Positions 19,001 through 62,998 of a stretch of DNA of 64,000 nt are shown here, piece by piece (position 1 is the stretch's first letter; each line of letters starts with the position of its first letter). The notes below the pieces were generated by a model. That model was not told the DNA's origin and did no database searches. It was given only the letters and a program-made list of their open reading frames with translations. The DNA comes from Octopus sinensis (Eukaryota). The DNA lies in assembly GCF_006345805.1 (NCBI RefSeq), contig NW_021834194.1:17102-81101 (forward strand), read 5' to 3'. The translations under genes were made by a program, and so were the position numbers.

Positions 19001-19944
19001 ATCAAACCATTAATGAAGAATTTTTCAGTAATATAATCTCTACAATTGGAATTTTCGAATGCCAAATAAAATTTGTATTCCTTTTTTAATATCTCAAAGC
19101 AACTATATTTATCCTCTCTTTTGCAAACTTTTGTACCACATCTACCGTAAATATCCACCTGGATATATTTTCCGAGCTCCTTAGCATAACCCATTCGATT
19201 GTTGCTTGGACGACAGTTCGATACGAACCAAGCAACCTTCTTTGTTTTTCCCGTTGCATAATTTTGAACTTGTACTTTTTGTCTTACTGACTTGTTAAAA
19301 TATCGAAATTTTCCGTAAGGATATACAATCGTACTGTCCTGCCGATAATTAATCGTCCAGTTGATTTTATTTCCCAGGTGTTTCACTGATGGGTTGAAAA
19401 AAGGACACTCTTGTGTCATATAAATCCATATTTGGTTCGTGTGGTTTGGTTTCTGTGATAGTCCCACTGTCTCATAAAAGAAAATAGCATCTACACTATT
19501 TTGCATTGCTTTGTTGTTTGTGACTAAACATTCATTAACTGGACATTTATATTCCAGGAAACTCGTTTGATTTTCCTTCAATGGTTGCAGATATCTTAAA
19601 CTGTATATTAACAACGTTTTAAACTTTGGTCTAATTGGCTTTAACTTTACATTTCGATCAGAATCTGATTGATTTTGGTGCGTATTCCGTTTATAATTTT
19701 CCCATCTTTCCTCTCCTGGTAGGACATATTTCATTTGAGCTTCGATACGATCGTTTTCAGGCTGATTACCTGGAAACAATCGAGAGGTATTCCTTCTGTA
19801 GGAAACATACTGCTTAGTTGTTGGAGTCCAATTCCAAATGTTTTGTAGGTTCTTGAGATTATATTCAAGTTGAGAAATATAAAAACAAATGCATATTACC
19901 ATGAATATGACAAGGGCGTAAAATATCTTGCGGTAGGTGTCCAT
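19001..19944 (-). CDS. FucTA: GT10 alpha-1,3-fucosyltransferase, first coding exon A1 (gene 1; 421 aa with B1, intron 10002-19000)
   Basis: Type II membrane N-terminus (RKIFYALVIFMVICICFYI), WIYMTQECP, NWTINYRQDS, KKVAWFVSNC, GT10 motif FYLAFENSNCRDYITEKF. Donor AT|GTAAGT at 19000. 944+322 = 1266 nt. Confidence 0.92.
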
Positions 19945-23840: not shown

Positions 23841-23844
23841 CATT

Positions 23845-25794
<1,950 letters not shown>

Positions 25795-33824: not shown

Positions 33825-34736
33825 GTGTGTGTGTAAACATCAATGTTAATGTCGAAGGTGCCTCGAAACACACACGCACATACACACCGGAACGGCACGC
33901 ATACCAGTATGGAAGGGAGGTAATTTTATACATATATTCTTAGAGTGATTTCCCCTGGCAATAAGATTTCCTGCCTCGTAACCTTGCACGGAATAATTTT
34001 TCCTCTCGTTCTGACAGTGTCTTTCTGTGTTTCTTTTTATTATTTCCAATCTTAAACAAATAATAATGATCCCCTCCTACATGCTGTGTATCAGTGTGAT
34101 TATATGAAACCCCATCTTTTGATAAGCTTTCCAAATTAATAAATTTATGGAATAATAAATGTGTGATTATATTGAAATGAGATTTACCGCATTTGTCAGG
34201 TTAAGAACAGTTTCATCTCCAGCTTAGTCGATATGTGGTCGGTTGAGCTGAAAATATGCACACCCATGTTAAAAGTGCTGGCGAGTTTGCATGGCAACTA
34301 TTTTTTCTCCTCAAATGAAAGGCGTGACCTCTAGGACAAAATTCCTCATCTTATAAAATGTGGCCCGAGTAGACCCGAATGAAATCGGGGGTTATATTAA
34401 CCAAAATGTGTTGCCGTCCATGATGAAGAAGTTTTGAATGCTTGCCATGGTGAGTGTACTGTCGTGAGAAAAAATCACTCCAAAACTTGGTGTTAAGGAA
34501 TTTTCTTTTACATCAAGTTCAAAATTTTACGCCAGCCGTTAAACTGCCACTACGTTGCAGTCGGTCGTTAAGAAATGCCAGCCATGGTGACTCTACTATC
34601 CTCAAATTCTATCCCTTCAAACTTTGGTTTCCAATATTTTTGTTTTATTCAGCTCGCAAGTTCGTCTGTCCCTTTTAAACGTTAGTGTTTTGCTGTTTGC
34701 CTTGAAGCAGACCTTTCCGTTGTCACTGCCTGATAT

Positions 34737-36207
34737 TTATGATTGATCTTTCAAAATATAATTTTTCTCAAGGAAAAATAAATTATTTTGGTTAATTATT
34801 TCCCCGTTATCAGTGAATAATTTAGCTTTCTTGTTTTTGTAAATTATTAATATAGAAGATGTAGACATAGGCAGTATAGTCTTTTAAACTGGGGTTATGT
34901 AGCTGGTGGTGGTATGACAGTTTGGGCCAAAAGTCTTTATTTATTTGAATACCATGTGGTTTGCCGCAATAATCTGTTACCAAAATGGTATCTTTACCAA
35001 CAGAAATAGAGTGACATTTCCTGCCAATGTCCCTCCTTGTCACACCACCTTTAGCTGAAATCCTATAAATTATTTGTCCCTGGAGGACATAGAAATAATT
35101 TTGGTAGAGAGATATTACTTGGGAGGTGCAGAGAATGGGTCTCTACCTCCCATAACTGTTGGCCATCCAGTTTGTAACAGATTACTCTGTTGATGCTGGT
35201 GAATGCAATTAAAAGTATATTCTGAACCCCTACAGCAATATCTGTAGGTGTTTCTTTGGTAATAAATTGATAGTTAATTGTATTATCCTCCCAATCAAAT
35301 TGGTAAACTGTCTTACCAAATATTTCTACACCTATAAGTGTAGAATCTTCCAAGTAACTCACCATATGTAACCCCAACTGTATCCTTTTGATCTTGAAGG
35401 TTTTAGGGCTGATAATAAGAATCATTTCTTGGAAGGGGAGGGTTGTCAGAACCATGTCTTCTCTGATTCTGGTGAAACTGGTCACAGAAGATGGACAATG
35501 GACATCATTTCTGTCACTGTCTCTTGTTACTAAACTTATTGTCTTATAATGGTGGGAGTATGTCATCACTCCCTCCTCATGATGACAATATTGGATATTG
35601 TGCTTTCCTGAAATTCTTCTCCAGATTCCTCGATATTTGCTTCTCTGGTCACAACTGGCTAAAGTGGCCGACATTTTGTGGTTATTTTTGGTGGATCAAT
35701 GGTTTTGTGTTTGTCTTGTAGAATATTTCTTTGTAAATAGTGTTCCAGGAACAATTCTAATTTTTCCAAACATAAGAAATTCTTGATTGTAATCGTTTTT
35801 TTAATGTCTTTCATCAGAATTTCTATTCTCTGTGTAAAATCTTTTAGAAAAGTATTTTTATCCATTCCTATTCTTTTTAAAAAAGTACATATTTCTTTCC
35901 AAGAATTTATCAACAAATTAATTTTGTCCTCATAGGCATTGAATCTTGTATAAAATATATGTTTGTCAAAACTATTTCGTCTTCTCATTATTTCCATCTT
36001 TTTATGGTCTCCTTTATGTCTTTTTTGTTTTGTTGTTGGCTGAGATGAAGCCCGTTTATCGGACATTTCTATCCTTGAACCGTCATCTCTCTCATATTTA
36101 CCCCTTTTATAGTCAACTCCTTCTTCATCCCATTTTGGTGTCGAGTTCCTTAAAGCTCTTTTCTGAGGGATAAGTTTCCTTAAAGTATTTTCTCTTGGGT
36201 CTTCCAT
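34737..36207 (-). pseudogene. Beta-propeller-like (NHL-like) pseudogene, copy 2, retaining the acceptor and ATG
   Basis: Acceptor TTTCTTTACAG (AG at 36215-36216), then 7 nt and ATG at 36207. CAG>TAG nonsense at 35659, two frame breaks shared with copy 1, and a 35-bp deletion relative to 321-355. Confidence 0.6.
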
Positions 36208-41273: not shown

Positions 41274-42844
41274 AAAATTATTTTAATATTTCATCTTTAT
41301 AAATTGTATTCTGACATTATAAAAGTTAAACATCCTATTAAATTTTAAAAGATTATAATTTTGATATATTTTTGTAAATTACATTTAAATATTGTATTTG
41401 AAGGAATAGTCTATGTTATAATTTGGTAAATATAGAAATATTCTTGGAGATTTCTGTGGAATTATCAGCTTGGTTGAGAAATAGAATAGTGACGGCTTTT
41501 TTTTTTTAAATTGTATATTTGTGGATGAGAAAGACATGAATAATATTTGAAGAGAGGGTGTGTCATTTATAGAGATAGGTAAACAGACTAAATGGTGGTG
41601 GTCGTGGTGGTAGAAAGAATTCAAGTTATGTATGTAATGTGTGGCTGATGTGTTTTACTCCTTTAGTTATTGAAACACGGCCATGCTGGAGCATTGCCTT
41701 GATGCATTTAACTGATCGTATTAGCACCGGTATTTCTTTTTCAGTCCGGTACATATTTTAACTGAATCTATTTGTGGATCAGCTAGGTTAGGAAATGAAG
41801 TTGAAATTTTAATTAAACAGTAAGTACTAATGATTAAATGATGGAAAGAATATATATATATATAAAGTGAGAGAGAGATACACACTTGTATACATACATA
41901 TATACGCACACTCTTCACATTTGTGCTAATTTCCTCCTACCATTTTATAAACTATAAAAGATGTGTCCAGGATTTCAAATACTTTTACAAGAAAAGAAAG
42001 TTCATATTTTTTTGAACACTTTCAAAAATATCTTATGAATTTTAAAGAGAGAAAATGTAAATTATATTTAATGACAAAAAGTTTTAGATTTTATGTTTCA
42101 TGGAAAATTCAAAATTTCTAAATCAATTTTACAGAAATTTAAGATAAGAAATCAAATAGGTACGTAACTGTGTCTTTATTTTTGTCCCACTAACATTGCT
42201 TGATAACCGATGCTGGTGTGTTTACATCCCTGTAACTTAAAAGTTCAGCAAAAGACACCAATAGAATAAGTACTAAGCTTACAAAGAATAAGTCCTGGGG
42301 TCAATTTGTTTGACTAAAGGTGGTACTCCAGTATGGCCACAGTCAAATGACTGAAACAAGTACAAGAATAAAAGAATACATATATATACATATATACACG
42401 TACACTATATCAACACACACACATGGATATAATATATACATGTTTATGTAAAAGGGAAATAAAATGTTGAAGTTGATATTTAAAAGGAGACAGGGAATGA
42501 GAGAAAGAGAGAGAGATGAAAGTAAAAGAAGAGAAGGACATATGAAGGATATAAAATAGGAGAGGGGGCGGGGTTGTTATCATTATTATTAATTACTATT
42601 GGGTGGTGAGCTGGCAGAATTGTTAGCATGCCGGGCAAAATGCTAGGCAACTATCTAACAATTTATCAACTGTCTACTGACACGATTTTCCTGATAAAGA
42701 AGATAACAATTGTTTGTTTTCGGATTTTATAAATCTTTGTTACTGATCAATCCTCTTATCTAACTAGTTTACTGCCTCATTCAAGAAATACTTACTGCTA
42801 CATCAATAACTACTTGAAACTGTTCACATCACACCAAATAAGGA

Positions 42845-43350
42845 ATGGACACCTACCGCAAGATATTTTTCCTCTTTGTCATATTCATGGTAATATGCAT
42901 TTCTTTTTATATTTCTCAATTTGAATATAATCTCAAGAAACTACAAGACATTTGGAATTGGACTTCAACAACTAAGCAGTATGTTTCCTACACAAGGAAT
43001 ACCTCTCGATTGTTTCCAGGTAATCAGCCTGAAAACGATCGTATCGAAGCTCAAATGAAATATGTCCTACCAGGAGAAGAAAGATGGGAAAATTATGAAC
43101 GGAATAGGCACCAAAATCAGTCAGATTCTGATCGAAATGTAAAGTTAAAGCCAAATAGACCAAAGTTTAAAACGTTGTTAATATACAGTTTAAGATATCT
43201 GCAACCATTGAAGGAAAATCAAACGAGTTTCCTGGAATATAAATGTCCAGTTAATGAATGTTTAGTCACAAACAACAAAGCAATGCAAAATAGTGTAGAT
43301 GCTATTTTCTTTTATGAGACAGTGGGACTATCACAGAAACCAACCCACGA
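42845..43350 (+). pseudogene. Inverted, 3'-truncated fucosyltransferase exon A3 (first ~168 codons) fused to antisense LINE
   Basis: MDTYRKIFFLFVIF..GLSQKPTH matches A1/A4, then switches to LINE-derived sequence. 5' flank homology extends to about 42655. Confidence 0.88.
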
Positions 43351-43648
43351 AAATAAAGGACTTCAACCAGTTATAGAGTTCATCTCTTACGCCCAATGCA
43401 GAGAGCTTCACCATAAGTCTTTTGTGTGGCACAGAGTTAAAAGCCTTAGCAAAGTCCGGGTAAACAACATCCACCTAGGATCCGCGATCAGTGATTTGGG
43501 TAACGTTCTCAAGAAACTCGATTGAGTTAGAAATAAATCCAAATTGTGATGGCTGGATGAGGCTGTGAGACTTCCAGAAGTTCCAGAGGGTTTCCCTGAT
43601 ACAGGATTCCATCAGCTTGGCGATGCAGCTAGTAAGACTAACAGGTTC
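43349..43648 (-). mobile_element. CR1/L2 LINE RT fragment, same family as 39305
   Basis: The reverse complement matches 39305-39535 (CAGCCATCACAATTTGG..GTCCTTTATTTTCG) and extends it upstream (PVSLTSCIAKLME). Confidence 0.85.
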
Positions 43649-48012: not shown

Positions 48013-48801
48013 TAAATAAGGACAATATCAATATTTAAATATCGATATTATCAAGTGGCCAGCATGGAAATAAATAACATAGAACGGTAATAATTTTTTA
48101 CAACTATAAATAAGGGTATCTGAGAGACACCACCATACCGAAGTAGTAGTCAAATCCCTGACTTTAAAAACCACCTAAAATGTTCATATTGCACCACAAG
48201 ATAAGACAGAGGGTCAAAATAAACTAGCAAAAAGATATTACTGGATAATTCAAGTTCCTGGATTTCTAGCTTGGCTTCAAATAAACTCTGCTTTCATCAG
48301 TTGAATAAACCAGATGGTATATTCAATGTGATTTCAATGTCATTCGTTGAAAGCATGCGAAATAACTCGGAAAAGAAAAAAACTTACGAAACAAAACTCC
48401 GTTGCTGTATCACTGAGTTTCCCGGTGACCCAACAGGTCACGGGTAGTCTAGTATTTATATAAGCACAACTCTGTAACGTGACACACATAAAGAAATAAA
48501 TCATGTAACGATGGAAACGAATTCACGAAAAGAAAAATAAACACTGTTCAATATGTTTGTTTAAATACGGTTGTAGAAGTAAAAACAGTTCGAAAGGAAA
48601 GATTACCCAAGAATTTTAAAGGGTTTTCTTATAATCGCGAGAATTTGCAGTTTTTAAGTTCTCTTACCTCTTCCCTATCTTTCCCGCCTCCTCTCAATCT
48701 CTCTCTCGCTCTCTCTTTCGCTCCCTCTCTCTCTCTCTCTCAATATAGTTTATCCCGTTCAATGACAACATCATGGACATTATATCACAATATCCTATGT
48801 T

Positions 48802-49123
48802 TTATGTCCACCGGCGCCTTCCAATACACTGACCCTTTCCTGCCCACCATTCCCATACGTTCTCATACCATGTCGGCTTGTAATAATCGGCAGCGTGTAG
48901 CATCGCACAAACACGACACCAAAATTTGGTATTAATAAATTCTCCTGTTCCTTTCCATTTGAAATACTCATTATAAAGAGTATCATTTTTATCAAGTTTA
49001 TGCAGATAATCTGCCAATTCTTTTGGGGATTTAAAATCCTCGTAGTGGATGTACGAATTCTCGGGTGCTACTTCACGATAGTCGTCAGGATGGGCACCCA
49101 TTACTATTGGAATAACATTATAT
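48802..49123 (-). CDS. FucTA: GT10 fucosyltransferase terminal exon B2 (intact)
   Basis: AG acceptor at 49124-49125, 322 nt, YNVIPIVMGAHPDDY..GRRRWT*, no disruptions. In phase with the A4 donor. Confidence 0.82.
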
Positions 49124-49266
49124 CTGCAATAGACAAAAGAAAAGAAAAAACGAAAATACAGCTGCCATAAACAATATTGGAATGAGAAATAATGATTCAT
49201 GCAAGCAAATTATATATATAAATCATATATAAAGATATCATATAAAACATCTGTCTATCTACATAC

Positions 49267-49297
<31 letters not shown>

Positions 49298-49309
49298 AAA
49301 CTGAGAATG

Positions 49310-50208
49310 TCAGTAATATAATCTCTACAACTGGAATTTTCGAATGCCAAATAAAATTTGTATTCCTTTTTTAACATCTCAAAGCAACTAGTTTTATTCT
49401 CTCTTTTGCAAACTTTTGTACCACATCTACCGTAAATATCCACCTTAGCATAACCCATTCGATTGTTGGTTGGACGACAGTTCGATACGAACCAAGCAAC
49501 CTTCTTTGTTTTTCCCGCTGCATAATTTTGAAATTGTACTTTTTCTCTTACTGACTTGTTAAAATATCGAAATTTCCTATAAGGATATACAATCGTACTG
49601 TCCGGCCATTAAGTAATCGTCCAGTTGATTTTGTTTCCCAGGTGTTTCACTGATGGGTTGAAAACAGGACACTCTTGTGTCATAAAAATCCATATTTGGT
49701 TCGTGTGGGTTGGTTTCTGTGATAGTCCCACTCTCTCATAAAAGAAAATAGCATCTACACTATTTTGCATTGCTTTGTTGTTTGTGACTAAACATTCATT
49801 AACTGGACATTTATATTCCAGGAAACTCGTTTGATTTTCCTTCAATGGTTGCAGATATTCTAAACTGTATATTAACAACGTTTTAAACTTTGGTCTAATT
49901 GGCTTTAACTTTACATTTCGATCAGAATCTGACTGATTTTGGTGCCTATTCCGTTTATAATTTTCCCATCTTTCCTCTCCTGGTAGGACATATTTCATTT
50001 GAGCTTCGATACGATCGTTTTCAGTCTGATTACCTGGAAACAATCGAGAGGAATTCCTTCTGTAGGAAACATACTGCTTAGTTGTTGAAGTCCAATTCCA
50101 AATGTTTTGTAGGTTCTTGAGATTATATTCAAATTGAGAAATATAAAAAGAAATGCATATTACCATGAATATGACAAAGAGGAAAAATATCTTGCGGTAG
50201 GTGTCAAT
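49310..50208 (-). pseudogene. Dead fucosyltransferase exon A2
   Basis: ATG>ATT at 50206-50208, in-frame TAA at 49609-49611, 21-nt deletion (ELGKYIQ), and the exon end plus donor deleted at 49310. Confidence 0.9.
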
Positions 50209-50784
50209 TCCTTATTTGGTGTGATGTGAACAGTTTCAAGTCGTTATTCATGTAGCAGTAAGTATTTCTTGAATGAGGCAGTGAACTAGTTAGATAAAAG
50301 GATTGATCACTAACAAAGATTTATAAAATCCTAAAACAAACAATTGTTGTCTTCTTCATCAGGAAAATCGTGTCAATAGACAGTTGACAAATTGTTCGAT
50401 CAAGAGAAAAATATCAGCTAAAACACACCTTAATGCCTTCGATATTTTAATTAAGTAGCACAATGATACACGCCTCGTGCACACACATACACACTCATAC
50501 ACACACGCGTATCCCCCACGCGCATACACTAAATACATATATACATATATGATATGTAAATATGCGTATGAAGAGACTCATGCGAACACGTAGGTCAATA
50601 GTTGTTGATAACATCCCATCAACTTGCAATATGTCTGAATATTTACTGTCAGGCTTATGGCGAGCATATGAGTGGAGGCGTATGCGTTACCCTTTCCAAT
50701 AAAACTCTCACCTATGAACAAGTCAACACATGTTTGTATAGCACTATCAACCCTAGCTAAATCATATATTTGTATATATATATA

Positions 50785-50815
<31 letters not shown>

Positions 50816-50974
50816 ATGTATATATATATATATATAGATAGATATATAGATAGAGATATAGATATATGTATATATATACATATATATATATACATATATA
50901 TATATAAAATTAAATTCAGCACAAACCAAAGCAATAAATAAGACAAATGAAAATATACGAAATGAAATAATCAC

Positions 50975-51037
50975 CTGTGTATCGATCGATTTCAGGTATC
51001 AACATCCGCAAGGATATCTGTAACTTCGTCAGCACAG
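50975..51037 (-). ncRNA. Type I hammerhead ribozyme-like motif with canonical core
   Basis: CTGTG-CTGACGA-AG..ATATCC ttgc GGATGT..CT-GAA-ATCGATCGAT-A^CACAG: 5-bp stem I and a palindromic stem III. Confidence 0.65.
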
Positions 51038-51133
51038 TCTGTTATGAACATAATTTGCTGGACTAGATGCAAAAAAACGATACCGGAGTTTCGCATGCAT
51101 AAAGTACAACCGATTAAGTTCGAATGTATCTTT

Positions 51134-51175
<42 letters not shown>

Positions 51176-51176
<1 letters not shown>

Positions 51177-51748
51177 CAATCAATATAAGGGTAACAAAAA
51201 ATTCAAGAAAAATTTTCTGCCACCAGCGGTCAAGTGAGAAAATAGAAATAGTCACAGACTATATGATAGATTCAACAAAATATTAAGGAATGACCCTGAG
51301 AAGGTCGTTCGACTCACTTGAAAAGAGCAGCTAAACTCAAAACCGCAAAAAATAGTAGTAATTCTGAAACTAGAGGAAAATAAAAAACATTTATCCCCTT
51401 CAAACTTTGTACCATTCAAGGTTTCAACATCTTCACGCAATCAAATTTAATTAAATTTTTAATTTTAATTTAATTAAATTTGATTGCGTGAAGATGTTGA
51501 AACCTTGCAGGGTACAAAGTTTGAAGGGGATAAATGTTTTTTATTTTCCTCTAGTTTCAGAATTACTACTATTTTTTGCGGTTTTGAGTTTAGCTGCTCT
51601 TTTCAAGTGAGTGGAACGACCTTCTCAGGGTCATTCCTTAATATTTTGTTGAATGTATCATATAGTCTGTGACTATTTCTATTTTCTCACTTGACCGCTG
51701 GTGGCAGAAAATTTTTCTTGAAATTTTTGTTACCCTTATATTGATTGA
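51176..51748. repeat. ~570-bp near-perfect palindrome; partial third arm at about 51945-52010
   Basis: 51176-51455 is the reverse complement of about 51472-51748, with an AT-only loop. Confidence 0.9.
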
Positions 51749-52256
51749 TTAATGAATTTTTGACTAATTCTGAAATTTGTATCAGCAGCTTATATTTGCT
51801 GCGGAGTAGATGGCGCGATTACGGTGAATTCGAAAATTTACGATATATAGACCCGAGGCTTAGATGGTGTAGCCTCGTGTATATATATCTGCCTCCTATT
51901 TTGGTGACTTTGCTGACGAGACAAGCCAAGCGTAAACGGATTTAATTTAACTTAATTAAATTTGATTGCGTGAAGATGTTGAAACCTTGCAGGGTACAAA
52001 GTTTGAAGGTTGACGTATCAAATGATTCAGTAATCTTTCGATTACTAAAGAAAGTATGTTTTTGGCACAACTCTTTTTTACCAGTAAAAATCCCGAGAAC
52101 GAGGTTGGGTAGTAAAATTTTGACGTCATTTTCCGGCAATATTTCGATTTGCTTCCAATGTATCACCTTTGTCCAATGTTTCTCTCTCCCTCACCCTCTC
52201 TCCCCTTTCATTCTCTATCTCTCTGCTCCCACTCTCTTTGTATATACATATATATT

Positions 52257-52317
<61 letters not shown>

Positions 52318-52334
52318 TACATTTACGCATAATT

Positions 52335-52548
52335 TACTTAGAAAATACATTCTCATTCAACAACAAGAAATACCGACAGATAAAAGGCACGGCTATGGGT
52401 ACAAAATTCGCACCATTATATGCCAACCTGGTGGTGGGTTTCCTGGAGAACAAACTATATGATGAAATATGGAAAGTCTTCGAACACGACTTCAGAGAAG
52501 ACATCAAGAAAAAGTGGAAACGCTACCTCGATGACTGCTTCATCTTTT
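52335..52548 (+). mobile_element. Penelope-like RT fragment, same family as 2741-3454
   Basis: LENTFSFNNKKYRQIKGTAMGTKFAPLYANLVVGFLENKLYDEI..KRYLDDCFIF. Confidence 0.88.
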
Positions 52549-52885
52549 CAAGATGGTGTAATTTAGTTGTTAAAGTTTTTTTTTCAAATATTTCACGTAT
52601 AAGCGTGTATATATAAATATAGTGGTATAAATATCAACACAATTTTTTCCCCTGCCTCCCTTAATTTTCTTTTTCTTTATTTGTCTCTCTCCCCTTCTCC
52701 AAACACACAGACACACGCACACACACACGCACACACACACACACACACAAACACACACGGACACACACACAGACACAGACACACACCTCCACAAAACGAT
52801 CATAAAAAGTGGAAAGAATTCTTAAACCCAAAAAAAGCATTTGACCATTCTCACAATGATAAAAGGAAATAAAATGAATGGCCAA

Positions 52886-53225
52886 CCTCCCCGCCACCAC
52901 ACACCCAGTGACACTGTGAAGTGGTCAAAGCTGAAATTCTTAGAACCCCCTTGGAGTCAATATTTTGGCCTACCTCCCCGCCAACACACACTCAGTGACA
53001 CTGTGAAGTGGTCAAAGCTGAAATTCTTAGAACCCCCTTGGAGGCAATATTATGGCCTACCTCCCCGCCACCACACACTCAGTGACACTGTGAAGTGGTC
53101 AAAGCTGAAATTCTTAGAACCCCCTTGGAGGCAATATTATGGCCTACCTCCCCGCCACCACACACTCAGTGACACTGTGAAGTGGTCAAAGCTGAAATTC
53201 TTAGAACCCCCTTGGAGGCAATATT
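52886..53225. repeat. 87-bp minisatellite, 4 copies
   Basis: CCTCCCCGCCA anchor at 52886, 52973, 53060 and 53147. Confidence 0.95.
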
Positions 53226-53595
53226 CTGTCCAGCAGAGCAAAAAAATTATTTCCTTCTTCTTACCTCTCCCTTCCCCTCTCTCTTTAGCACTCACCTCAG
53301 ATAAAAACACACACACACACACACACATACACATACACATACACACATGTTCTCTCTCTCACTTTCTCCTCATCCACCTCACCCTCTTGTACTGTCTTAT
53401 ATTCCTCCCCACCACTACGAAACTCTATAAAATCATTACAATTCCCCACAAAATCTTATTTTGATTTGAAAACCCCACTAGAATGGGAGAAAGCGCTAAT
53501 GATCTAAGTGATATGATATGTATATAAAAAATGTAATATATAAATAAATATCTGTAAATATAAACCATCCGATCTTCTGATTACCTCATTTCTTG

Positions 53596-53676
<81 letters not shown>

Positions 53677-53712
53677 ATATATATATACAAATGTTACATT
53701 ACTCGGTAGTCA

Positions 53713-53774
53713 AGATAAAACTCTGAGTTTCAGATGCCGAAGTGGAAATCACAACACCATCTCTTCGGTTATCT
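53713..53774 (-). ncRNA. Hammerhead-like motif (C4 variant)
   Basis: AGATAA-CCGAAGA-GATG..CATC-T-GAAACTC a GAGT-T^TTATCT: 6-bp stem I. Confidence 0.5.
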
Positions 53775-53884
53775 GGCTATTTGAAAACGTTTTCAAATAG
53801 ATAAATTTCCTCTATTTACATAATATTGAGGTCTCTTTCTTTCTTTTGTTATCTTACCGTTTTATCAATATATATATATATATA

Positions 53885-54225
53885 TATGTAGGTCCCGGGT
53901 TGAGTCGGGGTTAACCACAGTAAATAATGTACTCAATACATGGCAGAGTAAATTAATTTTTTTTATAGAAGGAGCTTCTACAGGACTAGAACTGTTTCAT
54001 TCAAATGAAATCATCAGGAAGCTTAGCGTCAAGAATAGTTTTGGCATTTATACATTTAGGCAGATTTGATGGGGTGGTGGTGGTGATGGGGGACTTTTTT
54101 GGGGGTAGGCAGGGCATAAACTGTCTTTCTTAAGGGAGTGGTCAAAAGAATCAGTGCTAAAGTAGATAAATGAATAAATAGAATAATTGAATAGAGTTTT
54201 AGGTAAATAGGAAGACTATTGCTTA
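53885..54225 (-). mobile_element. ~340-bp hammerhead-bearing short element, copy 1 (motif 53973-54023)
   Basis: Homologous to 55325-55680 and 57215-57480; AGCTTC-CTGATGA..GAAACAG..CTGTA^GAAGCT. Confidence 0.7.
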
Positions 54226-54528
54226 TATATATATATATATATATGTGTGTTGTGTGTGTGTATGTGTATATATATGTATGTGTGTATATATGTGTGTATG
54301 TATGTATATCTGTGTATGTGTATGTGAATGTATATGTACATGTATGTATATATATGTATATGTGTATTTATAGATATATGTGTGTGTGTATGTATATGTA
54401 CTAGTGTATGTGGGTGTGTATATGTACACATGTATATATGTGTGTATAAATGTAGATATGAGTGTGCGTATGTGGATACGAATACACGTATGTATATGTG
54501 TATGTGTATTTACATATATATATGTATA

Positions 54529-54915
54529 CTAGCAGTATCGCCCGGCGTTGCTCAGGTTTGTAAGGGAAATAACTATAAAGCATTTTTAGAGAGTTATAGC
54601 CAAAAAATAGCAAAAAAATGGAAAAAAAATGATGGTAAATTTTTTTTTGAGAGTAAAAAAAGGTTGAGTTGCGTCCCCTAGACAGTCTGTGGTTTGTTTT
54701 TTTAGATTCTCGACCCCATGTCGAATTTATCGATTCTTTTCAGAACTGGGGGAACTTTTCAAAATTTTCGCTGCGTTAGTTTTGAATTATGACATTGGGC
54801 TATGTGTGTGTCAAGTTTCATCAGAATCGGTTGAAAGCCGTGGTCAGGGTGAGGGTACGAGAAAACAGACACACAGAAACACGCACAGACAAACTGCTGT
54901 TTATATAGAGAGAGA
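54529..54915 (-). mobile_element. Non-autonomous Helitron-like element
   Basis: 5' TC at 54915 and 3' GAGCAACGCCGGGCGATACTGCTAG at 54529, between A and T. Shares its 3' end and GAAAAAATGATGGTAAATT with 4116-4959. Confidence 0.75.
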
Positions 54916-55275
54916 TACATATATATATGGATGTAAATTCGGATATGAATATGAATTTGGATATGGATATATATTTGTATGTGCTTATGTGCGTGGATCT
55001 ATGTGTTTGTATGTATGTATGTATACGTATATGAGTGTATATATATGTGCGCACGTATGCTTTGTGTATGTATATATATTATATATATATATATATAATA
55101 TATTATTATATATATATAATATATATATATGTATATATATGTATATATTGTATGTATATATGTATGTGTATATTTGTGTGTATATATCTGTGTGTATATG
55201 TGTATGTACGCGTATATGTATGTGTAAGTATGGGTATCTGCATGTATATATATTTATTATTTGTGTATGCATGTA

Positions 55276-55324
<49 letters not shown>

Positions 55325-55326
<2 letters not shown>

Positions 55327-55680
55327 ATGTAGGTCCCGGATTGATTCGGGGTTAACCACAGTAAATAAGGTACTCAATACATAGCAGAGTAAAATTAATT
55401 TATTATATAGAAGGAGCTTCTACAGGACTAGAACTGTTTCATTCAAGAGAAATCTTCAGGAAGCTAGTTAACAAGAATTGTATTGGCATTTATACATTTA
55501 GGCAGGTTTAAAGGGGGTGGTGGGGGACTTTTTGGGGGTAGGCATAGCGCAAAATATCATACTTGGGGGAGTGGTCAAGGAGTCAGTGGTAAATTAGATA
55601 AAAGAATAAATAAAAAAATAAAAAATATATATAAAAGAATAGAGTTTTAGGTAAATAAGGAGATTCTCTCACTTATACCT
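55325..55680 (-). mobile_element. Hammerhead-bearing short element, copy 2 (motif 55415-55465, core CTGAAGA)
   Basis: Homology to 53885-54225. Confidence 0.7.
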
Positions 55681-55795
55681 ATACACATATGTATACATAT
55701 ATAACACAACATACATACATATATACATACACACTACATACACACACACATATACATATATATACACATACACATACATATACGTATCTACACAT

Positions 55796-55847
<52 letters not shown>

Positions 55848-56590
55848 ATATATATATGTATGTATATATATATGTGTATATATAAGGACTTGTAGATCTC
55901 TGTATGTGTATATATGTATGTATGTGTATGTGTGTAGATATGTATTTGTATGTACGTGAACGCATGTGTATGTACGTGCATGTATATGTGTAGGTATGTA
56001 TTTGTAGGTATGCTTTTATGTACACGTGTATGCGCGCATGTGTGCATATATGTATTTATAAGCATATGCGTGTACATATGCGAGTAGATGTTCATGTGTG
56101 TTTATGTGTACTGAAGTACTTTTATATATGTGGTTTTGTGTGTACATAGTTATGTATACGTTTATGTGAAAGTGGGTACATTTATGTATGTATGAATATG
56201 TGTACCTGCGTGTGCATATGTATGTACATACATATATGCATATATATGTATATATGTATATATGCGCCTGTGTAGAGAGAGATACATACATAAGCATGAG
56301 TGGATGATAAGGAAATGAGCGAGAGAACATATGTGTTTGTGTATGCGTATGAGTGTGAAGGAAGGGAGAGGGGCGGTAAATGGACTCCATTCAGGCCGGC
56401 TAGCCCCCCGGGGAGCGGCTAATCCAGCGCCACTAAATGTGTGTCGGCGAGTGGGCAGGTCATATATTACACCTTCTATGACTCTGAAGAGGTCAAAATA
56501 AAAATAAAAATAAAAATAAAAATAAACTAAAATAAAGGAGAAAAAATGTGTGTGTATATATGTGCATGTATGCGTGTATGTATGTGTAAG

Positions 56591-56649
<59 letters not shown>

Positions 56650-56719
56650 GTATGTGTATGTGTGTATACATGCATGTGTATATGTATGTGTGTGTGTGTC
56701 TGAATGTGTATACTCCTTT

Positions 56720-56799
<80 letters not shown>

Positions 56800-57214
56800 G
56801 TATATATATATGTGTAGATATATATATGTGCGTGTGTATCCGTATATGTATGTATTATATATATATATATGCGTATGTATATAAGTGTGTATGTATGAGT
56901 ATGTGTATGTGTGTGTGTGTATGTGTATACATATGTATATGTGTATACATATGTGTATGTATATGTATACATATATATATATACCACACGTTGATGATAG
57001 GCAATACACCTTGAAACCATGGTCCGTGTGTGGTTTCCGCTTCATCGGGGAATTATCTCCCTTTGCAGGTTAAAGGACACCGTGATGGTGTCAAGCCTAT
57101 CTGGCGACGTTGATGTTCGCCTGGGGCTAAATGCAACAGTAACACCCCCACCACCCTGCCCTGTCCCTAGCCATATTCAGATGGCTTTAGTCCCTTATGT
57201 TATATATATATATA

Positions 57215-57480
57215 TATAAGCAATAGTCTTCCTATTTACCTAAAACTCTATTCTATTAGTCTATTTATTCATTTATCTACTTTATCACTGATTCTTTTGA
57301 CCACTCCCCTAAGAAAGACAGTTAGAGCCCTGCCTACCACAAAAAAGGTCCCCCATCACCAACACCCCATCAAATCTGCCTAAATGTATAAATGCCAAAA
57401 CTATTCTTGACGCCAAGCTTCCTGATGATTTCATTTGAATGAAACAGTTCTAGTCCTGTAGAAGCTCCTTCTATAATATA
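57215..57480 (+). mobile_element. Hammerhead-bearing short element, copy 3 (motif 57416-57466)
   Basis: Inverted relative to copies 1 and 2; AGCTTC CTGATGA TTTCATTTGAAT GAAACAG TTCTAGTC CTGTA GAAGCT. Confidence 0.7.
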
Positions 57481-58066
57481 TATAGACATACGTATATGTA
57501 TTCACACCCTTGTCCATGCAGTTACCAGCTATTTCCGCTAGCTAATCTGTATCTCTCATATATGAATGTGTATTCATCCAGTACATTTCAATAAATAGAG
57601 ATATTTGAATGTTTACCGGCTGATGTCTGTCGATTGTTTATCCTCTTTGTTTTCTTAATTGCCACTGTTTTGTTCTATATTATTATGTTTGACCTTAAAG
57701 TTCATATGTAGTGGTTTAATAAATTATGTGATTGGGTATTATCCGGTAGTTGATCGTTGATTAAGATGTGTTTCTCCATTTTCCTATTTTGTATATATAT
57801 ATATATATATATATATATTTCAACAATTGAGGGTAAAATTAATTAATTATTAATCAATTTCACCAAGTATTCAGTATGTAAAGGGACCATTTAAGGCGAA
57901 TTCAAAATATTACATTTTATAAAGGGCTTAGTAATATAAATTACTATGCCACATACTGAACTCAGTATGTGGCAAAGTAATTTATTTTACTAAGCCCTTT
58001 ATAAAATTATATATATATATATATAATATATATATATAGTTATATATATATAGTTATATATATTAG

Positions 58067-58115
<49 letters not shown>

Positions 58116-58204
58116 ATATAGTTATTATATATAGTTATATATATATATAATATATATTATATATATATATATTTAAAAAAAGGAGATGTCGAACACGAGT
58201 GGTG

Positions 58205-60508
58205 ATATATAAAAAAGGAAATGAAGAAAATGCTGACAAATAATTGAAGTAATTTAAGTAATTTAATTAGGTGAAAGTTCTTTTACCGGTTGCGCATTTG
58301 TTATGCTTATCAAAATATAAAAGAGAGATTAGAGTCTGTCTCTTATATGTGAAAAAAAGAGGCTCCAGAGTTGTTTTGGATTTGCTTGGTTTCGCGCCTA
58401 AAATTTTGATTGGTCATTATGAAGGGGTCACGTGAATGTTTGAATGGAAGTTGGTGTTGGGGTAAGAAAAAAGGCTCCAGAGAAGTTAAAATTTGGCTAG
58501 TGTCCCGCCTAAAATTTCTTATTGGCCATAATAAAGAGGTCACGTGAATGTTTAGAATTTTCGAAAATAGTGTTGTTGAAAATTCTTATTGTTCAGGCTG
58601 GTCAGTAGACGGCAAGAGATATCTTGATGACTGCTTCATCCTTTGGCCCGAAACCGTCGAGAAGCTTAACGAATTTCACACTCTTATAAATGGGCTCAAC
58701 ACAAACATTATTTTCACAATGGAATACAGCCCTCAACAAATTCCCTTCCTCGACATCCTCATTAAAATTCACAACAAAAAAATAGAAACAGACATATACT
58801 ACAAGCCCACAGACTCCAAGCAATACCTCCCTTTCAATTCATGCCACCCTAGACACGTTAAAATTAACATTCCCTACAACTTAGCCAAGAGAATTTGCAC
58901 TATAGTCTCCAATAAAAACACCCGTCTCTTACGTCTACAAGAACTCAAGGGCACATTAACAAGCAGGGATTACCCCACGTCACTATTGACAATGGGATCC
59001 AACGCGCCCTAAAACTCAGCACGCAGGAACTTAGACGCCGCCCTAAACCTGTTACATCGAACCCCATACTCTACCATACATCTCTACACACAACCCCCTC
59101 AACAATGAAGCTTTTGACACCATCCTCCAGAACATTCCTGTATTACAAAAGGACCATAGAATGAACCAAATCCTCCTAACACACGAAATCATAAAGAGCA
59201 AAAGGCAACCCAAATCATTGAAAACCATCCTAACAAATGCCAAAGTACTGCCAACCACAACAACTAAACCCACAGTAAACAAATGCAATAGACCCAACTG
59301 TGGTATATGCATCAACCTAATAGAAGGTCCGGAATTCCTTTTTAAACAAGGACAACGTTTCACAGTAAAACACAACTTCACATGCGCATCAGAAACCTAG
59401 TATATGTCTTAACTTGCTCGGGCTGTAATGAACACTACATAGGCCAACAAAAAATAGCCTCCGCCACGCATGACTGTCCACAGATCCCAAATAAAAATAC
59501 AGGAATATAGAAAAATAGCATTTAGTGCACATATTGATACCTGTGCCGCACAACTCCATCATCCCAATTTTAGAATCTTTCCCCTCTACAAATTTAAAGA
59601 CAATGCCACTCATACCCAGCGAATAACCATGGAATCCCACCTTATTAATAAATACAGACCACTTCTAAACACATGCCCCTAACACGAACCCACAACAAAC
59701 ACACTTACACCTGCACACACCCTACACACACCTTTACCCAGATATTAACACCATGACACACACAAATATATGGTTCCACACATACACATAATTGAATACG
59801 GGTGCAAAACATCCAACACTATTTTTTGGAAATGGCTGTAAATATTGACTTCACACAAATACGTTGCTTCACGATACAGGCACAAGGCCAGCAGAACTAT
59901 AAATATTGAAAATTGTACCCACACAACACACATATATACACGCGCGCGCGCCCCAACATACATATAAAAACACACGCGCGCGCGCGCACACACACATACA
60001 TACATACAGCTCTCCCTGTTCTAAACGAACTTACTTATCCAGGCAAGCGGAAAATACACTCCCTAACTACGCGCTAAAAAGCTATTTAAAATATCCACAT
60101 GACGTCTACTGACCAGCCTGAACAATAAGAATTTTCAACAACACTATTTTCGAAAATTCTAAACATTCACGTGACCTCTTTATTATGGCCAATAAGAAAT
60201 TTTAGGCGGGACACTAGCCAAATTTTAACTTCTTTGGAGCCTTTTTCTTACCCCAACACCAACTTCCATTCAAAACATTCACGTGACCCCTTCATAATGA
60301 CCAATCAAAATTTTAGGCGCGAAACCAAGCAAATCCAAAACAACTCTGGAGCCTCTTTTTTCACATATAAGAGACAGACTCTAATCTCTCTTTATATTTT
60401 GATAAGCATAACAAATGCGCAACCCGGTAAAAAAACTTTCACCTAATTAAATTACTTAAATTACTTCAATTATTTGTCAGCATTTTCTTCATTTCCTTTT
60501 TTAATATA
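58205..60508 (+). mobile_element. 5'-truncated Penelope-like element bracketed by ~400-bp inverted pseudo-LTRs
   Basis: 58205-58611 is the reverse complement of 60103-60508. Inside are KRYLDDCFILW, IPFLDIL, YYKPTDSKQYLPFNSCHP and a GIY-YIG region to 59682, all frameshifted. Confidence 0.9.
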
Positions 60509-60690
60509 TATATATATATATAGAGTTATATATATATATATATATAGTTATATATATATATATATATATATAGAGTAAGTAAATATATGGCACAACGAAG
60601 TACCGATATTTACTGGAAAATAGCGAACGTAATAAATACGGCGCTAATATATAGTTATATATAGTAATATATATATACACATATATATGC

Positions 60691-60739
<49 letters not shown>

Positions 60740-61021
60740 GTTATATACATATACATATATTATATATATATACATATATATACACATATATAAATATATA
60801 CATATATTATATATATAATATATATACGTATACATATATACATATATATATATATATTCATATATATACATATACATATATATATATACATTTATTTATA
60901 TACATATATATATATATATATAAATTTAATCCAAATAAGAAAGCACAAAAAAACACAACAACGCGAGTACGTGGAACACATATAGTATTATTTGATGCTC
61001 AGGAAAGAAGGAAAGAAGGAG

Positions 61022-61058
61022 GGTTTAACGTCTCGAGCGGAGCTCTTCGTCGGAAACA
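61022..61058 (-). ncRNA. Hammerhead-like motif (C4 variant), same family as 32862
   Basis: GTTT-CCGACGA-A-GAGC tcc GCTC-GAGAC-GTT^AAAC; A14>G in this copy. Confidence 0.4.
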
Positions 61059-61170
61059 TTGGAGAAGGAAAGATACAGAGAAGGGAAGACAGAGGGACAA
61101 AAATCGCCAACGGTACACACGAGGTCACATTTTGAATATATATAAATATATATCATATGAATATATTTAC

Positions 61171-61237
<67 letters not shown>

Positions 61238-61272
61238 TACATATACATATACATATATACACATATATTATA

Positions 61273-61326
<54 letters not shown>

Positions 61327-61741
61327 ATATATATATATTTGGATATATAGATAGATATAGATATAAATATATACGTTCTGAGTTCAAATTCCGCTGAGGT
61401 TGACATTACCGTTCATTCTTTTGGTGTAGATAAATTAAGTACCAGTTGTGTACTGAGCTCAATCTAATCGACTGGCCCCATTCCCCAAAATTTCGGACCT
61501 TGTTCCTAGAGTAGTATTTTAAATGGAATCAATTTTCTTAGCCATCTATTAGTTGTTGTATCCATGATGTTTAACAAGATTTCAATTCCCGCAGCTAATC
61601 TTCACTGTAACTTCTATACACAATGATTATTTTAATTAAATAGAAAACGGAAAAAACTAAAGCGTAATAATGACTTGGGCATCATATAAATTAAAGGAGG
61701 AAATACTTGAGCGTTCATGCAGTTTTCTCTCTTTCCCTCCA

Positions 61742-61776
<35 letters not shown>

Positions 61777-62054
61777 TTTCTCTTTCTCACTCACACACTC
61801 CGTAAAGTTTGTGAAGGAGAGTCACATACAAGTTGAGAATTATACCAGAGTAACGGGCTGGCTACCCTCATTGTTGTACGTACATGCTAATTCACACTCG
61901 CAAACCGTACACACATCGTTGCCAGTGTTTCATTGAAATAACATTAACTATAGGGAATTAACCAACTCTGAAGAAAGAGAGCCATTCGAAAAGCACTACT
62001 TAATCTCATTAATTCAAATACAAAGACACACGGATTTAAAATTCAAGTACTTAC

Positions 62055-62998
62055 TTCAAACCAGTAGTGAAGAATTTTTCAGTAATATAATCTCTACAAT
62101 TGGAATTTTCGAATGCCAAATAAAATTTGTATTCCTTTTTTAACATCTCAAAGCATTTATTTTCATTGTTTCTCGTGCAACTTTTTGTACCACATCCACC
62201 GTAAATATCCACTTGGATATATTTTCCGAGCTCCTTAGCATATCCCATTCGATTGTTGCTTGGACGACAGTTCGATACGAACCAAGCAACCTTCTTTGTT
62301 TTTCCCGCTGCATAATTTTGAACTTGTACTTTTTGTCTTACTGACTTGTTAAAATATCGAAATTTTCCGTAAGGATATACAATCGTACTGTCCTGCTTAT
62401 AAGTAATCGTCCAGTTGATTTTGTTTCCCAGGTGTTTCACTGATGGGTTGAAAACAGGACACTCTTGTGTCATAAAAATCCATATTTGGTTCGTGTGGTT
62501 TGCTTTCTGTGATAGTCCCACTCTCTCATAAAAGAAAATAGCATCTACACTATTTTGCATTGCTTTGTTGTTTGTGACTAAGCATTCATTAACTGGACAT
62601 TTATATTCCAGGAAACTCGTTTGATTTTCCTTCAATGGTTGCAGATATTCTAAACTGTATATTAACAACGTTTTAAACTTTGGTCTAATTGGCTTTAACT
62701 TTACATTTCGATCAGAATCAGACTGATTTTGGTGCGTAATCCGTTTATAATTTTCCCATCTCTCCTCTCTTGGTAGGACATATTTCATTTGAGCTTCGAT
62801 ACGATCGTTTTCAGTCTGATTACCTGGAAACAATCGAGAGGTATTCCTTGTGTAGGAAACATACTGCTTAGTTGTTGGAGTCCAATTCCAAATGTTTTGT
62901 ACGTTCTTGAGATCATATTTAAATTGAGAAATATAAAAACAAATGCATATTACCATGAATATGACAAAGAGGAAAAATATCTTGCGGTTGGTGTCCAT
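62055..62998 (-). CDS. FucTA: GT10 alpha-1,3-fucosyltransferase first coding exon A4 (intact)
   Basis: Open 944-nt exon, 31 aa differences from A1 in 314 codons, FYLAFENSNCRDYITEKF, donor AA|GTAAGT at 62054. Confidence 0.9.

What the first reader, a model, noticed from the sequence alone, without database searches (positions are those of the whole stretch)
48802..62998. More first exons than last exons: intact A4 must skip a donor-less A2 to reach B2 (possible variable-exon/constant-exon glycosyltransferase locus)
There are four A exons but two B exons, and I found no B exon between 50208 and 62055. A4's phase-2 donor (62054) fits B2's acceptor (49124), giving 421 aa over a 12.9-kb intron that contains the dead A2. 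B2 has stayed intact while its adjacent A2 gathered four lesions, suggesting B2 is in use. All A donors and B acceptors are phase-compatible, so A4-B1 or further upstream A exons could also combine. This would parallel UGT1A or clustered protocadherin logic (established for those loci; inference here) and could diversify fucosylated glycans.
Basis: partly seen in the sequence, partly recalled or inferred. Interest (0 to 1): 0.75.

Follow-up and report, generated by a model that had tools for sequence, protein, structure and literature searches.

The report
Fucosyltransferase gene spanning a dead duplicate exon
In this Octopus sinensis contig, an intact first exon of an alpha-1,3-fucosyltransferase gene can only reach a last exon by splicing across a 12.9-kb intron holding a decayed copy of that first exon; RefSeq already predicts this gene, and it looks like messy duplication and decay in a young gene family, not a UGT1A-style system.

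Summary
The window is Octopus sinensis contig VCDQ01005985.1. It holds four copies of a 944-nt first exon (A) and two copies of a 322-nt last exon (B) of a GT10 alpha-1,3-fucosyltransferase. No B-like sequence and no N lie between A2 and A4. A4 (62055-62998) joined to B2 (48802-49123) gives 421 aa, identical to RefSeq model XP_029656705.1. A1+B1 equals XP_029656706.1. So the A4-to-B2 join is already predicted, though it is not shown to be transcribed.

A2 is dead. It has lost its start codon, carries a stop and a 21-bp deletion, and a clean deletion with 2-nt microhomology fuses exon nt 918 to intron position -186 of B2. A3 is a truncated fragment. Among intact exons the ratio is therefore 1:1, and nothing shows B2 being shared by two live A exons.

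Selection is weak. dN/dS among A exons is about 0.7-1.0. A neutral copy would stay open with probability about 0.2.

A-A-B layouts recur in paralogous O. sinensis loci and in O. vulgaris. One of them has two intact A exons ahead of a single B.

Best reading: exon-level birth and death, leaving an ordinary two-exon gene with a dead exon in its intron. The UGT1A analogy holds for topology only.

The parts
62055..62998 (-). A4: intact first coding exon (944 nt, aa 1-314 plus 2 nt), ending at a phase-2 donor AA|GTAAGT (intron starts at 62054)
   Evidence: equals the N-terminal 315 aa of XP_029656705.1
62999..63924 (-). Upstream region of A4, homologous to the upstream regions of A1, A2 and the chromosomal A exons (presumed promoter region). 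The contig ends at 64000.
49124..62054 (-). 12,931-nt intron of the A4-B2 model. It is rich in transposable elements and microsatellites, holds no B-like sequence and has no N.
61184..62054 (-). Conserved 5' intron segment, shared with the introns after A1 and after the chromosomal A exons
49310..50208 (-). A2: dead copy of the first exon. Lesions: ATG->ATT, TAA at codon 200, a 21-bp deletion, substitutions at residues invariant in outgroups, and loss of the last 26 nt plus the donor. Homology with the upstream flank of the other A exons runs on to about 50906.
49309..49310 (-). Deletion junction: A2 exon nt 918 (...ATTACTGA) joined directly to intron position -186 (CATTCTCAG...). There is a 2-nt GA microhomology relative to the intact intron of the paralogue P0122.
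49124..49309 (-). Conserved 3' end of the intron (polypyrimidine tract and CAG acceptor), shared with all other B exons
48802..49123 (-). B2: intact last coding exon (322 nt including the stop codon, 106 aa). It has no change at the 27 outgroup-invariant positions.
48328..48801 (-). 3' flank of B2, homologous to the flanks of other B exons. It carries a 53-nt deletion that removes an ATTAAA conserved in B1, P0122, P0124 and O. vulgaris.
19001..19944 (-). A1: intact first exon of the neighbouring paralogue
   Evidence: XP_029656706.1
9680..10001 (-). B1: last exon of the A1-B1 gene (9.0-kb intron)
42653..43357 (+). A3: inverted fragment of an A unit (192 nt of upstream flank plus codons 1-171), truncated, with no B partner

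Best explanation
The region is one predicted two-exon gene for a Golgi GT10 alpha-1,3-fucosyltransferase (FucTA-like) in a young, tandemly duplicated Octopus family. Its single intron has come to contain a dead copy of its own first exon.

Shown:
- A4 and B2 are intact, with a consensus donor and acceptor of matching phase.
- A2 has neither a start codon nor a donor.
- No other B exon exists in between.

Inferred history:
- A2-B2 was once an ordinary A-intron-B gene.
- A microhomology-mediated deletion then removed the end of exon A2, its donor and nearly the whole intron.
- A4 is an upstream duplicate whose own B exon was either deleted or never copied.

Inferred mechanism: a transcript started at A4 has no acceptor available until B2, because first exons carry no acceptor and A2 no donor. 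A4 is therefore spliced to B2 by default.

This is exon-level birth and death, not a maintained variable-exon/constant-exon system. Only one live A exon sits upstream of B2 within the contig, which ends 1 kb beyond A4.
For: - Identity: the window is O. sinensis contig VCDQ01005985.1. A4+B2 is identical to XP_029656705.1 and A1+B1 to XP_029656706.1.
- Family: both Pfam GT10 domains are found. The alignment to human FUT9 (8D0O) spans aa 136-401, across the exon junction.
- Splice sites and reading frame.
- No B-like sequence and no gap in the intron.
- A2 lesions and the clean junction with GA microhomology.
- The intron ends are homologous to those of the A1-B1, P0122, P0124 and P0002 genes.
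- The two-exon structure is conserved in a 67%-identical O. bimaculoides paralogue.
- A4 changes 1 and B2 none of 84 residues invariant in 19 outgroup FucTs. A2 loses at least 5.
- Loss of B exons and decay of A exons are seen repeatedly in paralogous loci. These include the orphan A of P0121 with a remnant of a B 3' flank upstream of the next gene, A(y) with 3 stops, and a frameshifted proximal A in O. vulgaris.
Against: - No transcript evidence is available. The RefSeq XP model is a prediction, and no transcript-assembly (Logan) protein spans the junction.
- dN/dS among A exons is about 0.7-1.0. A4's syn:nonsyn count versus the family consensus (4:20) does not differ from that of the pseudo-exons.
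- A neutral copy would stay open with probability about 0.2.
- B2's 3' flank has lost a conserved ATTAAA.
- The contig ends 1 kb upstream of A4, so further A exons cannot be excluded.
- The order of the rearrangements is inferred, not shown.
Confidence: 0.62

Rival explanations
1. A4, A2 and B2 are all relics. A4 is an orphan first exon that is not transcribed or not productively spliced, and B2 is a stranded last exon. Both are simply too young to have picked up disabling mutations. The RefSeq model would then be a homology-driven artefact.
For: - dN/dS is about 1 for A4 against A1, A2, A(y) and P0124.
- Syn:nonsyn counts versus the consensus are 4:20 for A4, against 1:22 and 0:17 in the dead copies.
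- The chance of staying open at this divergence is about 0.2.
- A 53-nt deletion removes the conserved ATTAAA downstream of B2.
- No transcript-derived protein was found.
- RefSeq models the analogous orphan P0121 as A-only, 315 aa.
Against: - A4, its donor, B2 and its acceptor are all intact at once.
- A4+B2 keeps 83 of 84 outgroup-invariant residues, and the single change is a conservative R201K shared with P0124.
- B2 dN/dS against the other B exons is 0.28-0.77.
- Pooled over the six intact A exons, 6 of 138 nonsynonymous differences hit invariant positions, against about 25 expected.
Confidence: 0.22
2. This is a genuine variable-first-exon / constant-last-exon transcription unit (UGT1A or clustered-protocadherin logic). 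Several A exons, each with its own promoter, are alternatively spliced to a shared B exon to diversify fucosyltransferases.
For: - The topology fits. A exons are first exons with conserved upstream flanks, identical-phase GTAAGT donors and no acceptor. All six O. sinensis B acceptors are identical in sequence.
- A-A-B layouts recur. On CM016888.1, two intact A exons (P0121-A and P0122-A) precede a single B with no B in between.
- The P0124 locus and its O. vulgaris counterpart carry two or more tandem A units ahead of one B, and a different copy is intact in each species.
- The stem region shows dN/dS of about 1.4.
Against: - Within the contig only one intact A exon (A4) lies upstream of B2. 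The other, A2, is dead and has no donor.
- The surplus A exons are mostly pseudo-exons (A2, A3, A(y), and proximal A in O. vulgaris), which indicates redundancy and decay, not maintained diversity.
- RefSeq has no isoform joining P0121-A to the P0122 B exon.
- A remnant of a B 3' flank upstream of P0122-A points to accidental loss of B.
- The tandem A units are near-identical within a species: 98.7% in O. vulgaris.
- There is no transcript evidence.
Confidence: 0.12
3. Assembly artefact: the unplaced 81-kb contig collapses or misjoins paralogous copies, so the apparent absence of A4's own B exon is not real.
For: The contig is unplaced, it ends 1 kb upstream of A4, and it lies in a repeat-rich multi-copy family.
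Against: - There is no N in the window.
- The copies differ by 3-7%, which is enough for long reads to separate them.
- The same kind of A-A-B layout is seen in chromosome-scale sequence of two species.
- The A2/B2 junction is a clean microhomology join.
Confidence: 0.04

Closest known systems
Core alpha-1,3-fucosyltransferase FucTA (CAZy GT10; 'glycoprotein 3-alpha-L-fucosyltransferase A' of insects and molluscs; nearest solved structure human FUT9, PDB 8D0O)
   Same: Both Pfam GT10 domains are found. The protein is 45-55% identical to FucTA-like proteins across protostomes, with 79 invariant columns retained, including the FENSxxxxYxTEK motif. It aligns to FUT9 over aa 136-401.
   Different: It belongs to a recent Octopus-specific expansion (copies 3-7% diverged) with weak constraint. 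It is distinct from the canonical 506-aa O. sinensis FucTA (P0012, 55% identity). Acceptor specificity is unknown.
Vertebrate UGT1A locus (tandem alternative first exons, each with its own promoter, spliced to shared exons 2-5; it includes pseudo first exons that are skipped). Stated from established knowledge.
   Same: First exons lack an acceptor, have same-phase donors and sit upstream of a single downstream exon. A dead first exon sits inside the intron and is skipped. The first exon encodes the N-terminal part of a glycosyltransferase, which likely determines acceptor specificity.
   Different: Here only one live first exon lies upstream of the shared exon within the contig. The arrangement is not conserved or maintained, and different copies decay in different loci and species. 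There is no evidence of alternative promoter use. The family also contains ordinary 1:1 A-B genes.
Clustered protocadherins (variable exons plus constant exons). Stated from established knowledge.
   Same: The cis-splicing logic is the same: a promoter-proximal variable exon joins the first constant exon.
   Different: There is no large variable array, no stochastic promoter-choice machinery and no conservation. The resemblance is topological only.
Birth-and-death evolution of tandem gene families with partial duplicates and pseudo-exons
   Same: The copies are near-equidistant and young. There are deletions with microhomology, orphan exons, truncated fragments and introns filled with transposable elements. 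dN/dS is near 1.
   Different: Nothing essential differs. The particular point is that loss of a last exon leaves an upstream first exon able to adopt the neighbour's last exon.

Membership tests
GT10 alpha-1,3/4-fucosyltransferase | Glyco_tran_10_N and Glyco_transf_10 domains above the curated cut-offs | tested here: met
   PF17039 scores 59.7 bits (cut-off 28.7). PF00852 scores 201.6 bits (cut-off 23.9), spanning aa 232-407 and therefore both exons.
GT10 alpha-1,3/4-fucosyltransferase | Retention of family-invariant residues, including the alpha-1,3-FucT motif (FxxxFENSxxxxYxTEK) and the conserved cysteines | tested here: met
   79 invariant columns across 24 sequences including A4B2. 83 of 84 outgroup-invariant positions are kept; the exception is R201K.
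GT10 alpha-1,3/4-fucosyltransferase | GDP-fucose-dependent fucosyl transfer to GlcNAc | not testable with these tools
   Needs expression and an enzyme assay.
Variable-first-exon / constant-exon locus (UGT1A, clustered Pcdh type) | Two or more intact variable exons in tandem upstream of one shared constant exon | tested here: not met
   Upstream of B2 lie A4 (intact) and A2 (dead) only, and the contig ends 1 kb beyond A4. The feature is met structurally at a paralogous locus, P0121-A + P0122-A + one B.
Variable-first-exon / constant-exon locus (UGT1A, clustered Pcdh type) | Every variable exon ends in a donor of the same phase, and the constant exon has a single compatible acceptor | tested here: met
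   All A exons except A2 and the truncated A3 end in ..GA(A/T)|GTAAGT, phase 2. The six O. sinensis B acceptors are identical over the 26 nt examined, and the O. vulgaris one differs at a few positions of the pyrimidine tract. A2 has lost its donor.
Variable-first-exon / constant-exon locus (UGT1A, clustered Pcdh type) | Each variable exon has its own promoter and is expressed; transcripts join different variable exons to the same constant exon | not testable with these tools
   Upstream flanks are conserved among A units. No transcript data are available. No junction-spanning transcript-derived proteins were found, and RefSeq has no P0121-A + B isoform.
Variable-first-exon / constant-exon locus (UGT1A, clustered Pcdh type) | The arrangement and the variable-exon ORFs are maintained by selection across species | tested here: not met
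   In the P0124 locus the distal A is dead in O. sinensis, while the proximal A is frameshifted in O. vulgaris. The frameshift is a 1-nt change in an A-run, so a sequencing error is possible. Units are homogenised within each species. dN/dS among A exons is 0.7-1.0.

The most novel reading that the evidence does not exclude
The Octopus FucTA-like expansion contains nascent variable-first-exon transcription units, caught at birth. Loss of a last exon, or tandem duplication of the first-exon unit, leaves two intact, promoter-bearing A exons upstream of one B. Examples are P0121-A and P0122-A on O. sinensis CM016888.1 (about 14.137-14.157 Mb) and the 5.2-kb tandem A units in O. vulgaris. If both are spliced to the shared B, they would give enzymes with different stem and N-terminal catalytic halves. 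The window's A4-(dead A2)-B2 would be the resolved end state of such a unit.
Probability: 0.18. Interest if true: 0.55.

Novelty: new member of a known kind. Interest (0 to 1): 0.25.

Why it matters
Taken by itself this is an annotation point. XP_029656705.1 is a plausible gene whose intron contains a pseudo-exon, and the window holds two genes, one pseudo-exon and one fragment.

The modest wider interest is evolutionary. The family shows, in several loci and two species, how deletion of a last exon or duplication of a first-exon unit produces the A-A-B topology that underlies UGT1A-type loci. Here the redundant first exon usually decays instead of being kept. If any of these units proved to express two isoforms, it would be an invertebrate example of such a locus at its origin, in a lineage with unusual fucosylated N-glycans (background on mollusc N-glycans: PMC8699351).

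Tried and rejected
1. Degraded B exon in the intron. I searched with tblastn (E<=10, word size 2) and sensitive blastn and found none.
2. Transcript evidence. Two searches of the 5.8-billion-protein collection, one full-length and one with a 187-aa junction-spanning query, found no transcript-assembly (Logan) protein of this subfamily, only RefSeq models. The cluster listing showed 5 NCBI members only.
3. Selection tests. NG86 dN/dS, syn/nonsyn counts versus the consensus and an ORF-survival simulation have too little power at 3-7% divergence to show that A4 in particular is constrained.
4. Pairing A4 or A2 with B2 by tree congruence. The distances are star-like and mosaic: A2's 3' part resembles A1 and P0122, while A4 resembles P0124, P0121 and A(y). 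This is not decisive.
5. A2 as an insertion into a pre-existing A4-B2 intron. I judged this less likely because the junction is a flush join of truncated exon to truncated intron with microhomology, and the sequence beyond A2's 5' boundary does not continue the intron sequence of the paralogues.
6. 'Reciprocal loss of orthologous A exons' between O. sinensis and O. vulgaris. I softened this. The O. vulgaris units are 98.7% identical to each other, so 1:1 orthology is not established, and the frameshift lies in an A-run.
7. O. bimaculoides A-only model P0017. The locus has 6.2 kb of N, so it is uninformative.
8. Literature. Nothing was found on an octopus GT10 cluster or a GT10 variable-exon locus.
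Full report
**What the window is.**
The sequence is AT-rich eukaryotic DNA full of (TA)n-type microsatellites and retroelement fragments. The 421-aa product of A1+B1 is identical to RefSeq XP_029656706.1. The product of A4+B2 is identical to XP_029656705.1. Both are 'glycoprotein 3-alpha-L-fucosyltransferase A-like [Octopus sinensis]' on the unplaced 81,101-bp contig VCDQ01005985.1 of GCA_006345805.1. The gene range returned for XP_029656705.1 is 14,197 bp, exactly window 48802-62998. It places window 1-64000 at record 17102-81101, so the right end of the window is the end of the contig. The protein has both Pfam GT10 domains. It aligns to human FUT9 (PDB 8D0O) over aa 136-401, across the exon boundary at 315/316.

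**Checking the observation.**
- tblastn finds four A copies and two B copies and nothing else, even at E<=10. DNA self-comparison agrees. There are no Ns.
- A1 and A4 are open 944-nt exons ending in GA(T/A)|GTAAGT, phase 2.
- The B1 and B2 acceptors are identical over the last 20 intron bases plus the first 6 exon bases (TTTTCTTTTGTCTATTGCAG|ATATAA).
- A4+B2 reads through as ...EKFFTTGLK-YNVIPIVMGAH..., restoring the conserved GT10 sequence.
- A2 has ATG->ATT, TAA at codon 200, a 21-bp deletion and a truncated 3' end without a donor.
- A3 is an inverted fragment ending at codon 171.

**Anatomy of the A2/B2 junction.**
A2 exon nt 918 (window 49310...ATTACTGA) abuts CATTCTCAG... (49309). The same CATTCTCAG sequence sits in front of the (TA)n tract upstream of the B acceptor in the intact intron of paralogue P0122, where it is preceded by ...CAGTCAGA. 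This is a flush join with 2-nt (GA) microhomology. It is best explained by one deletion inside a former A2-intron-B2 gene that removed 26 nt of exon, the donor and all but 186 nt of the intron. Upstream, the A2 unit's homology to the other A units stops in a microsatellite about 700 nt before the start codon. Beyond that point the sequence is unrelated.

The rest of the 12.9-kb intron consists of:
- the conserved 0.7-0.9 kb that follows every A exon (61184-62054);
- reverse-transcriptase fragments, inverted repeats, an 87-bp tandem repeat, a 573-nt palindrome and long microsatellites.

No trace of a B exon or of the conserved B 3' flank is present. Only three sites in the intron have a YAG preceded by at least 17/20 pyrimidines, and one of them is the B2 acceptor.

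**Paralogous loci.**
The 90%-identity cluster of A1B1 has five RefSeq members. Three lie on chromosome CM016888.1.

- Locus 1 (L002/L003): an intact A exon is annotated as a 315-aa A-only protein (XP_029653358.2). That protein ends at the TAA inside the GTAAGT donor. It lies 11.4 kb upstream of the intact A-B gene P0122, with no B and no N in between. About 0.9-1.5 kb upstream of P0122-A there is a copy of the B 3' flank without its B exon. This suggests that the B exon of the upstream gene was deleted.
- Locus 2 (L004): the order is B(x), then 1.5 kb, A(y) with three in-frame stops, 4.8 kb, A(P0124) intact, a 1.5-kb intron, and B.
- The O. vulgaris counterpart (L006, about 97% identical) has at least two tandem 5.2-kb A units that are 98.7% identical to each other. 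The distal A is intact with its donor. The proximal A has a 1-nt deletion in an A4 run. One B follows. RefSeq there models only a 171-aa product from an internal Met.
- A more distant O. bimaculoides paralogue (67% identity) has the same two-exon structure.

A-A-B layouts therefore arise repeatedly in this family, and the surplus A exon is usually, but not always, dead.

**Selection.**
- All copies differ by only 3-7%.
- Pairwise NG86 dN/dS among A exons is 0.67-1.03 for intact pairs. The stem region is about 1.4 and the catalytic part about 0.7. B exons give 0.28-0.84.
- Against the family consensus, A4 has 4 synonymous and 20 nonsynonymous codon changes, much like the dead A2 (1:22 plus a stop) and A(y) (0:17 plus 3 stops).
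- A simulation shows that a neutral exon with about 25 substitutions keeps its ATG and stays stop-free 23% of the time.
- On the other side, intact copies almost never change residues that are invariant in 19 outgroup FucTs. A4 has 1 of 57 in exon A, a conservative R201K shared with P0124. B2 has 0 of 27. P0121-A has 0. A2 changes at least 5.
- Pooled over the six intact A exons, I count 6 of 138 nonsynonymous differences at invariant positions against about 25 expected. This calculation is my own.

The family as a whole is constrained at key sites. For A4 alone the evidence is suggestive, not significant.

**How it most likely works.**
From established splicing logic, a first exon has no acceptor. 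A transcript initiated at A4 therefore cannot include A2, which also lacks a donor, and will pair the A4 donor with the next competent acceptor, B2. That yields the 421-aa enzyme. Failure to splice gives a 315-aa product that lacks 106 C-terminal residues, including 27 outgroup-invariant ones, and is presumably inactive. This step is inferred. The only external support is the RefSeq model, which is a prediction. A caveat is that B2's 3' flank has a 53-nt deletion that removes an ATTAAA conserved in four other copies. Whether that motif is the poly(A) signal is unknown.

**Comparison with known systems.**
The topology is that of UGT1A or the clustered protocadherins, and human UGT1A also carries skipped pseudo first exons (established knowledge). 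The defining features of such a system are not met in the window. Only one live A exon lies upstream of B2. The intact A:B ratio is 1:1. The arrangement is not maintained across loci or species. Expression could not be tested.

The more economical description is birth-and-death evolution at the level of exons in a young tandem family. Literature searches found nothing on an octopus GT10 cluster or a GT10 variable-exon locus. Mollusc core alpha-1,3-fucosylation and the unusual octopus rhodopsin N-glycan are background only (PMC8699351).

**Verdict.**
- Observation: confirmed.
- Interpretation: partly supported. The A4-to-B2 join is right and already in RefSeq. The UGT1A-like diversification is not supported for this locus.
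- Novelty: a new member of a known kind.
- Interest: low to moderate.

The most interesting residue is the paralogous locus with two intact A exons and one B, which could be tested directly with junction reads.

Noticed in passing
L002 10001-10944 and L003 10001-17924 (O. sinensis CM016888.1, about 14,137,014-14,157,246): An intact orphan A exon (RefSeq A-only 315-aa model XP_029653358.2, no change at outgroup-invariant residues) lies 11.4 kb upstream of the intact A-B gene XP_036371064.1, with no B exon between them. A copy of a B 3' flank without its exon sits at L003 8457-9127.
   Followed up: partly
L006 (O. vulgaris OX597841.1, 25,058,387-25,080,367) and L004 (O. sinensis CM016888.1, 14,171,651-14,194,416): Tandem A-exon units (5.2-kb period, 98.7% identical in O. 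vulgaris; 5.7-kb period, 96% in O. sinensis) precede one B exon. The intact copy is the distal one in O. vulgaris and the proximal one in O. sinensis. The O. vulgaris frameshift is a 1-nt loss in an AAAA run and could be a sequencing error.
   Followed up: partly
window 48550-48620 (B2 3' flank, about +190 to +245 after the stop): A 53-nt deletion relative to B1, P0122, P0124 and O. vulgaris removes a conserved ATTAAA. No AATAAA or ATTAAA occurs within 900 nt downstream of the B2 stop.
   Followed up: partly
window about 10150-10262: A palindromic MITE-like element (TTTATTTAAAAGCAGCAG...CTGCTGCTTTTAAATAAAG) is inserted in the (TA)n tract about 150 nt upstream of the B1 acceptor. It is shared with the intron of paralogue P0002 but absent from B2, P0122 and P0124.
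   Followed up: no
window 1-1555 and 34555-36072: A 1.5-kb duplication at 97% identity carries ORFs of 168-203 aa and 182 aa with no Pfam match. It is probably an uncharacterised repeat element.
   Followed up: partly
window 51176-51748: A 573-nt stretch matches its own reverse complement at 97%, a long palindrome inside the A4-B2 intron.
   Followed up: no
window 52878-53231: An 87-bp tandem repeat of about 4 copies lies inside a 207-aa ORF with a repeated peptide ([29 protein letters not shown]).
   Followed up: no
window 58000-58614 and 60100-60747: Inverted repeats at 85-93% identity flank a segment with a reverse-transcriptase-like ORF (58548-59012, no Pfam hit). It is probably a retroelement or a rearranged element in the intron.
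   Followed up: no
window 2741-3454, 4296-4712, 14070-15301: Transposable-element remnants: two reverse-transcriptase fragments (RVT_1, E=1e-8 and 9e-12) and a weak, sub-threshold Pif1 2B-domain match (20.4 bits against a cut-off of 23.9) in an ORF that may be Helitron-derived.
   Followed up: partly
window 22000-24300 and 24321-25690: This is the most GC-rich part of the window (0.47). It has overlapping ORFs on both strands with no Pfam match, followed by two 0.5-kb direct repeats at 98% identity (24321-24823 and 25183-25690).
   Followed up: no
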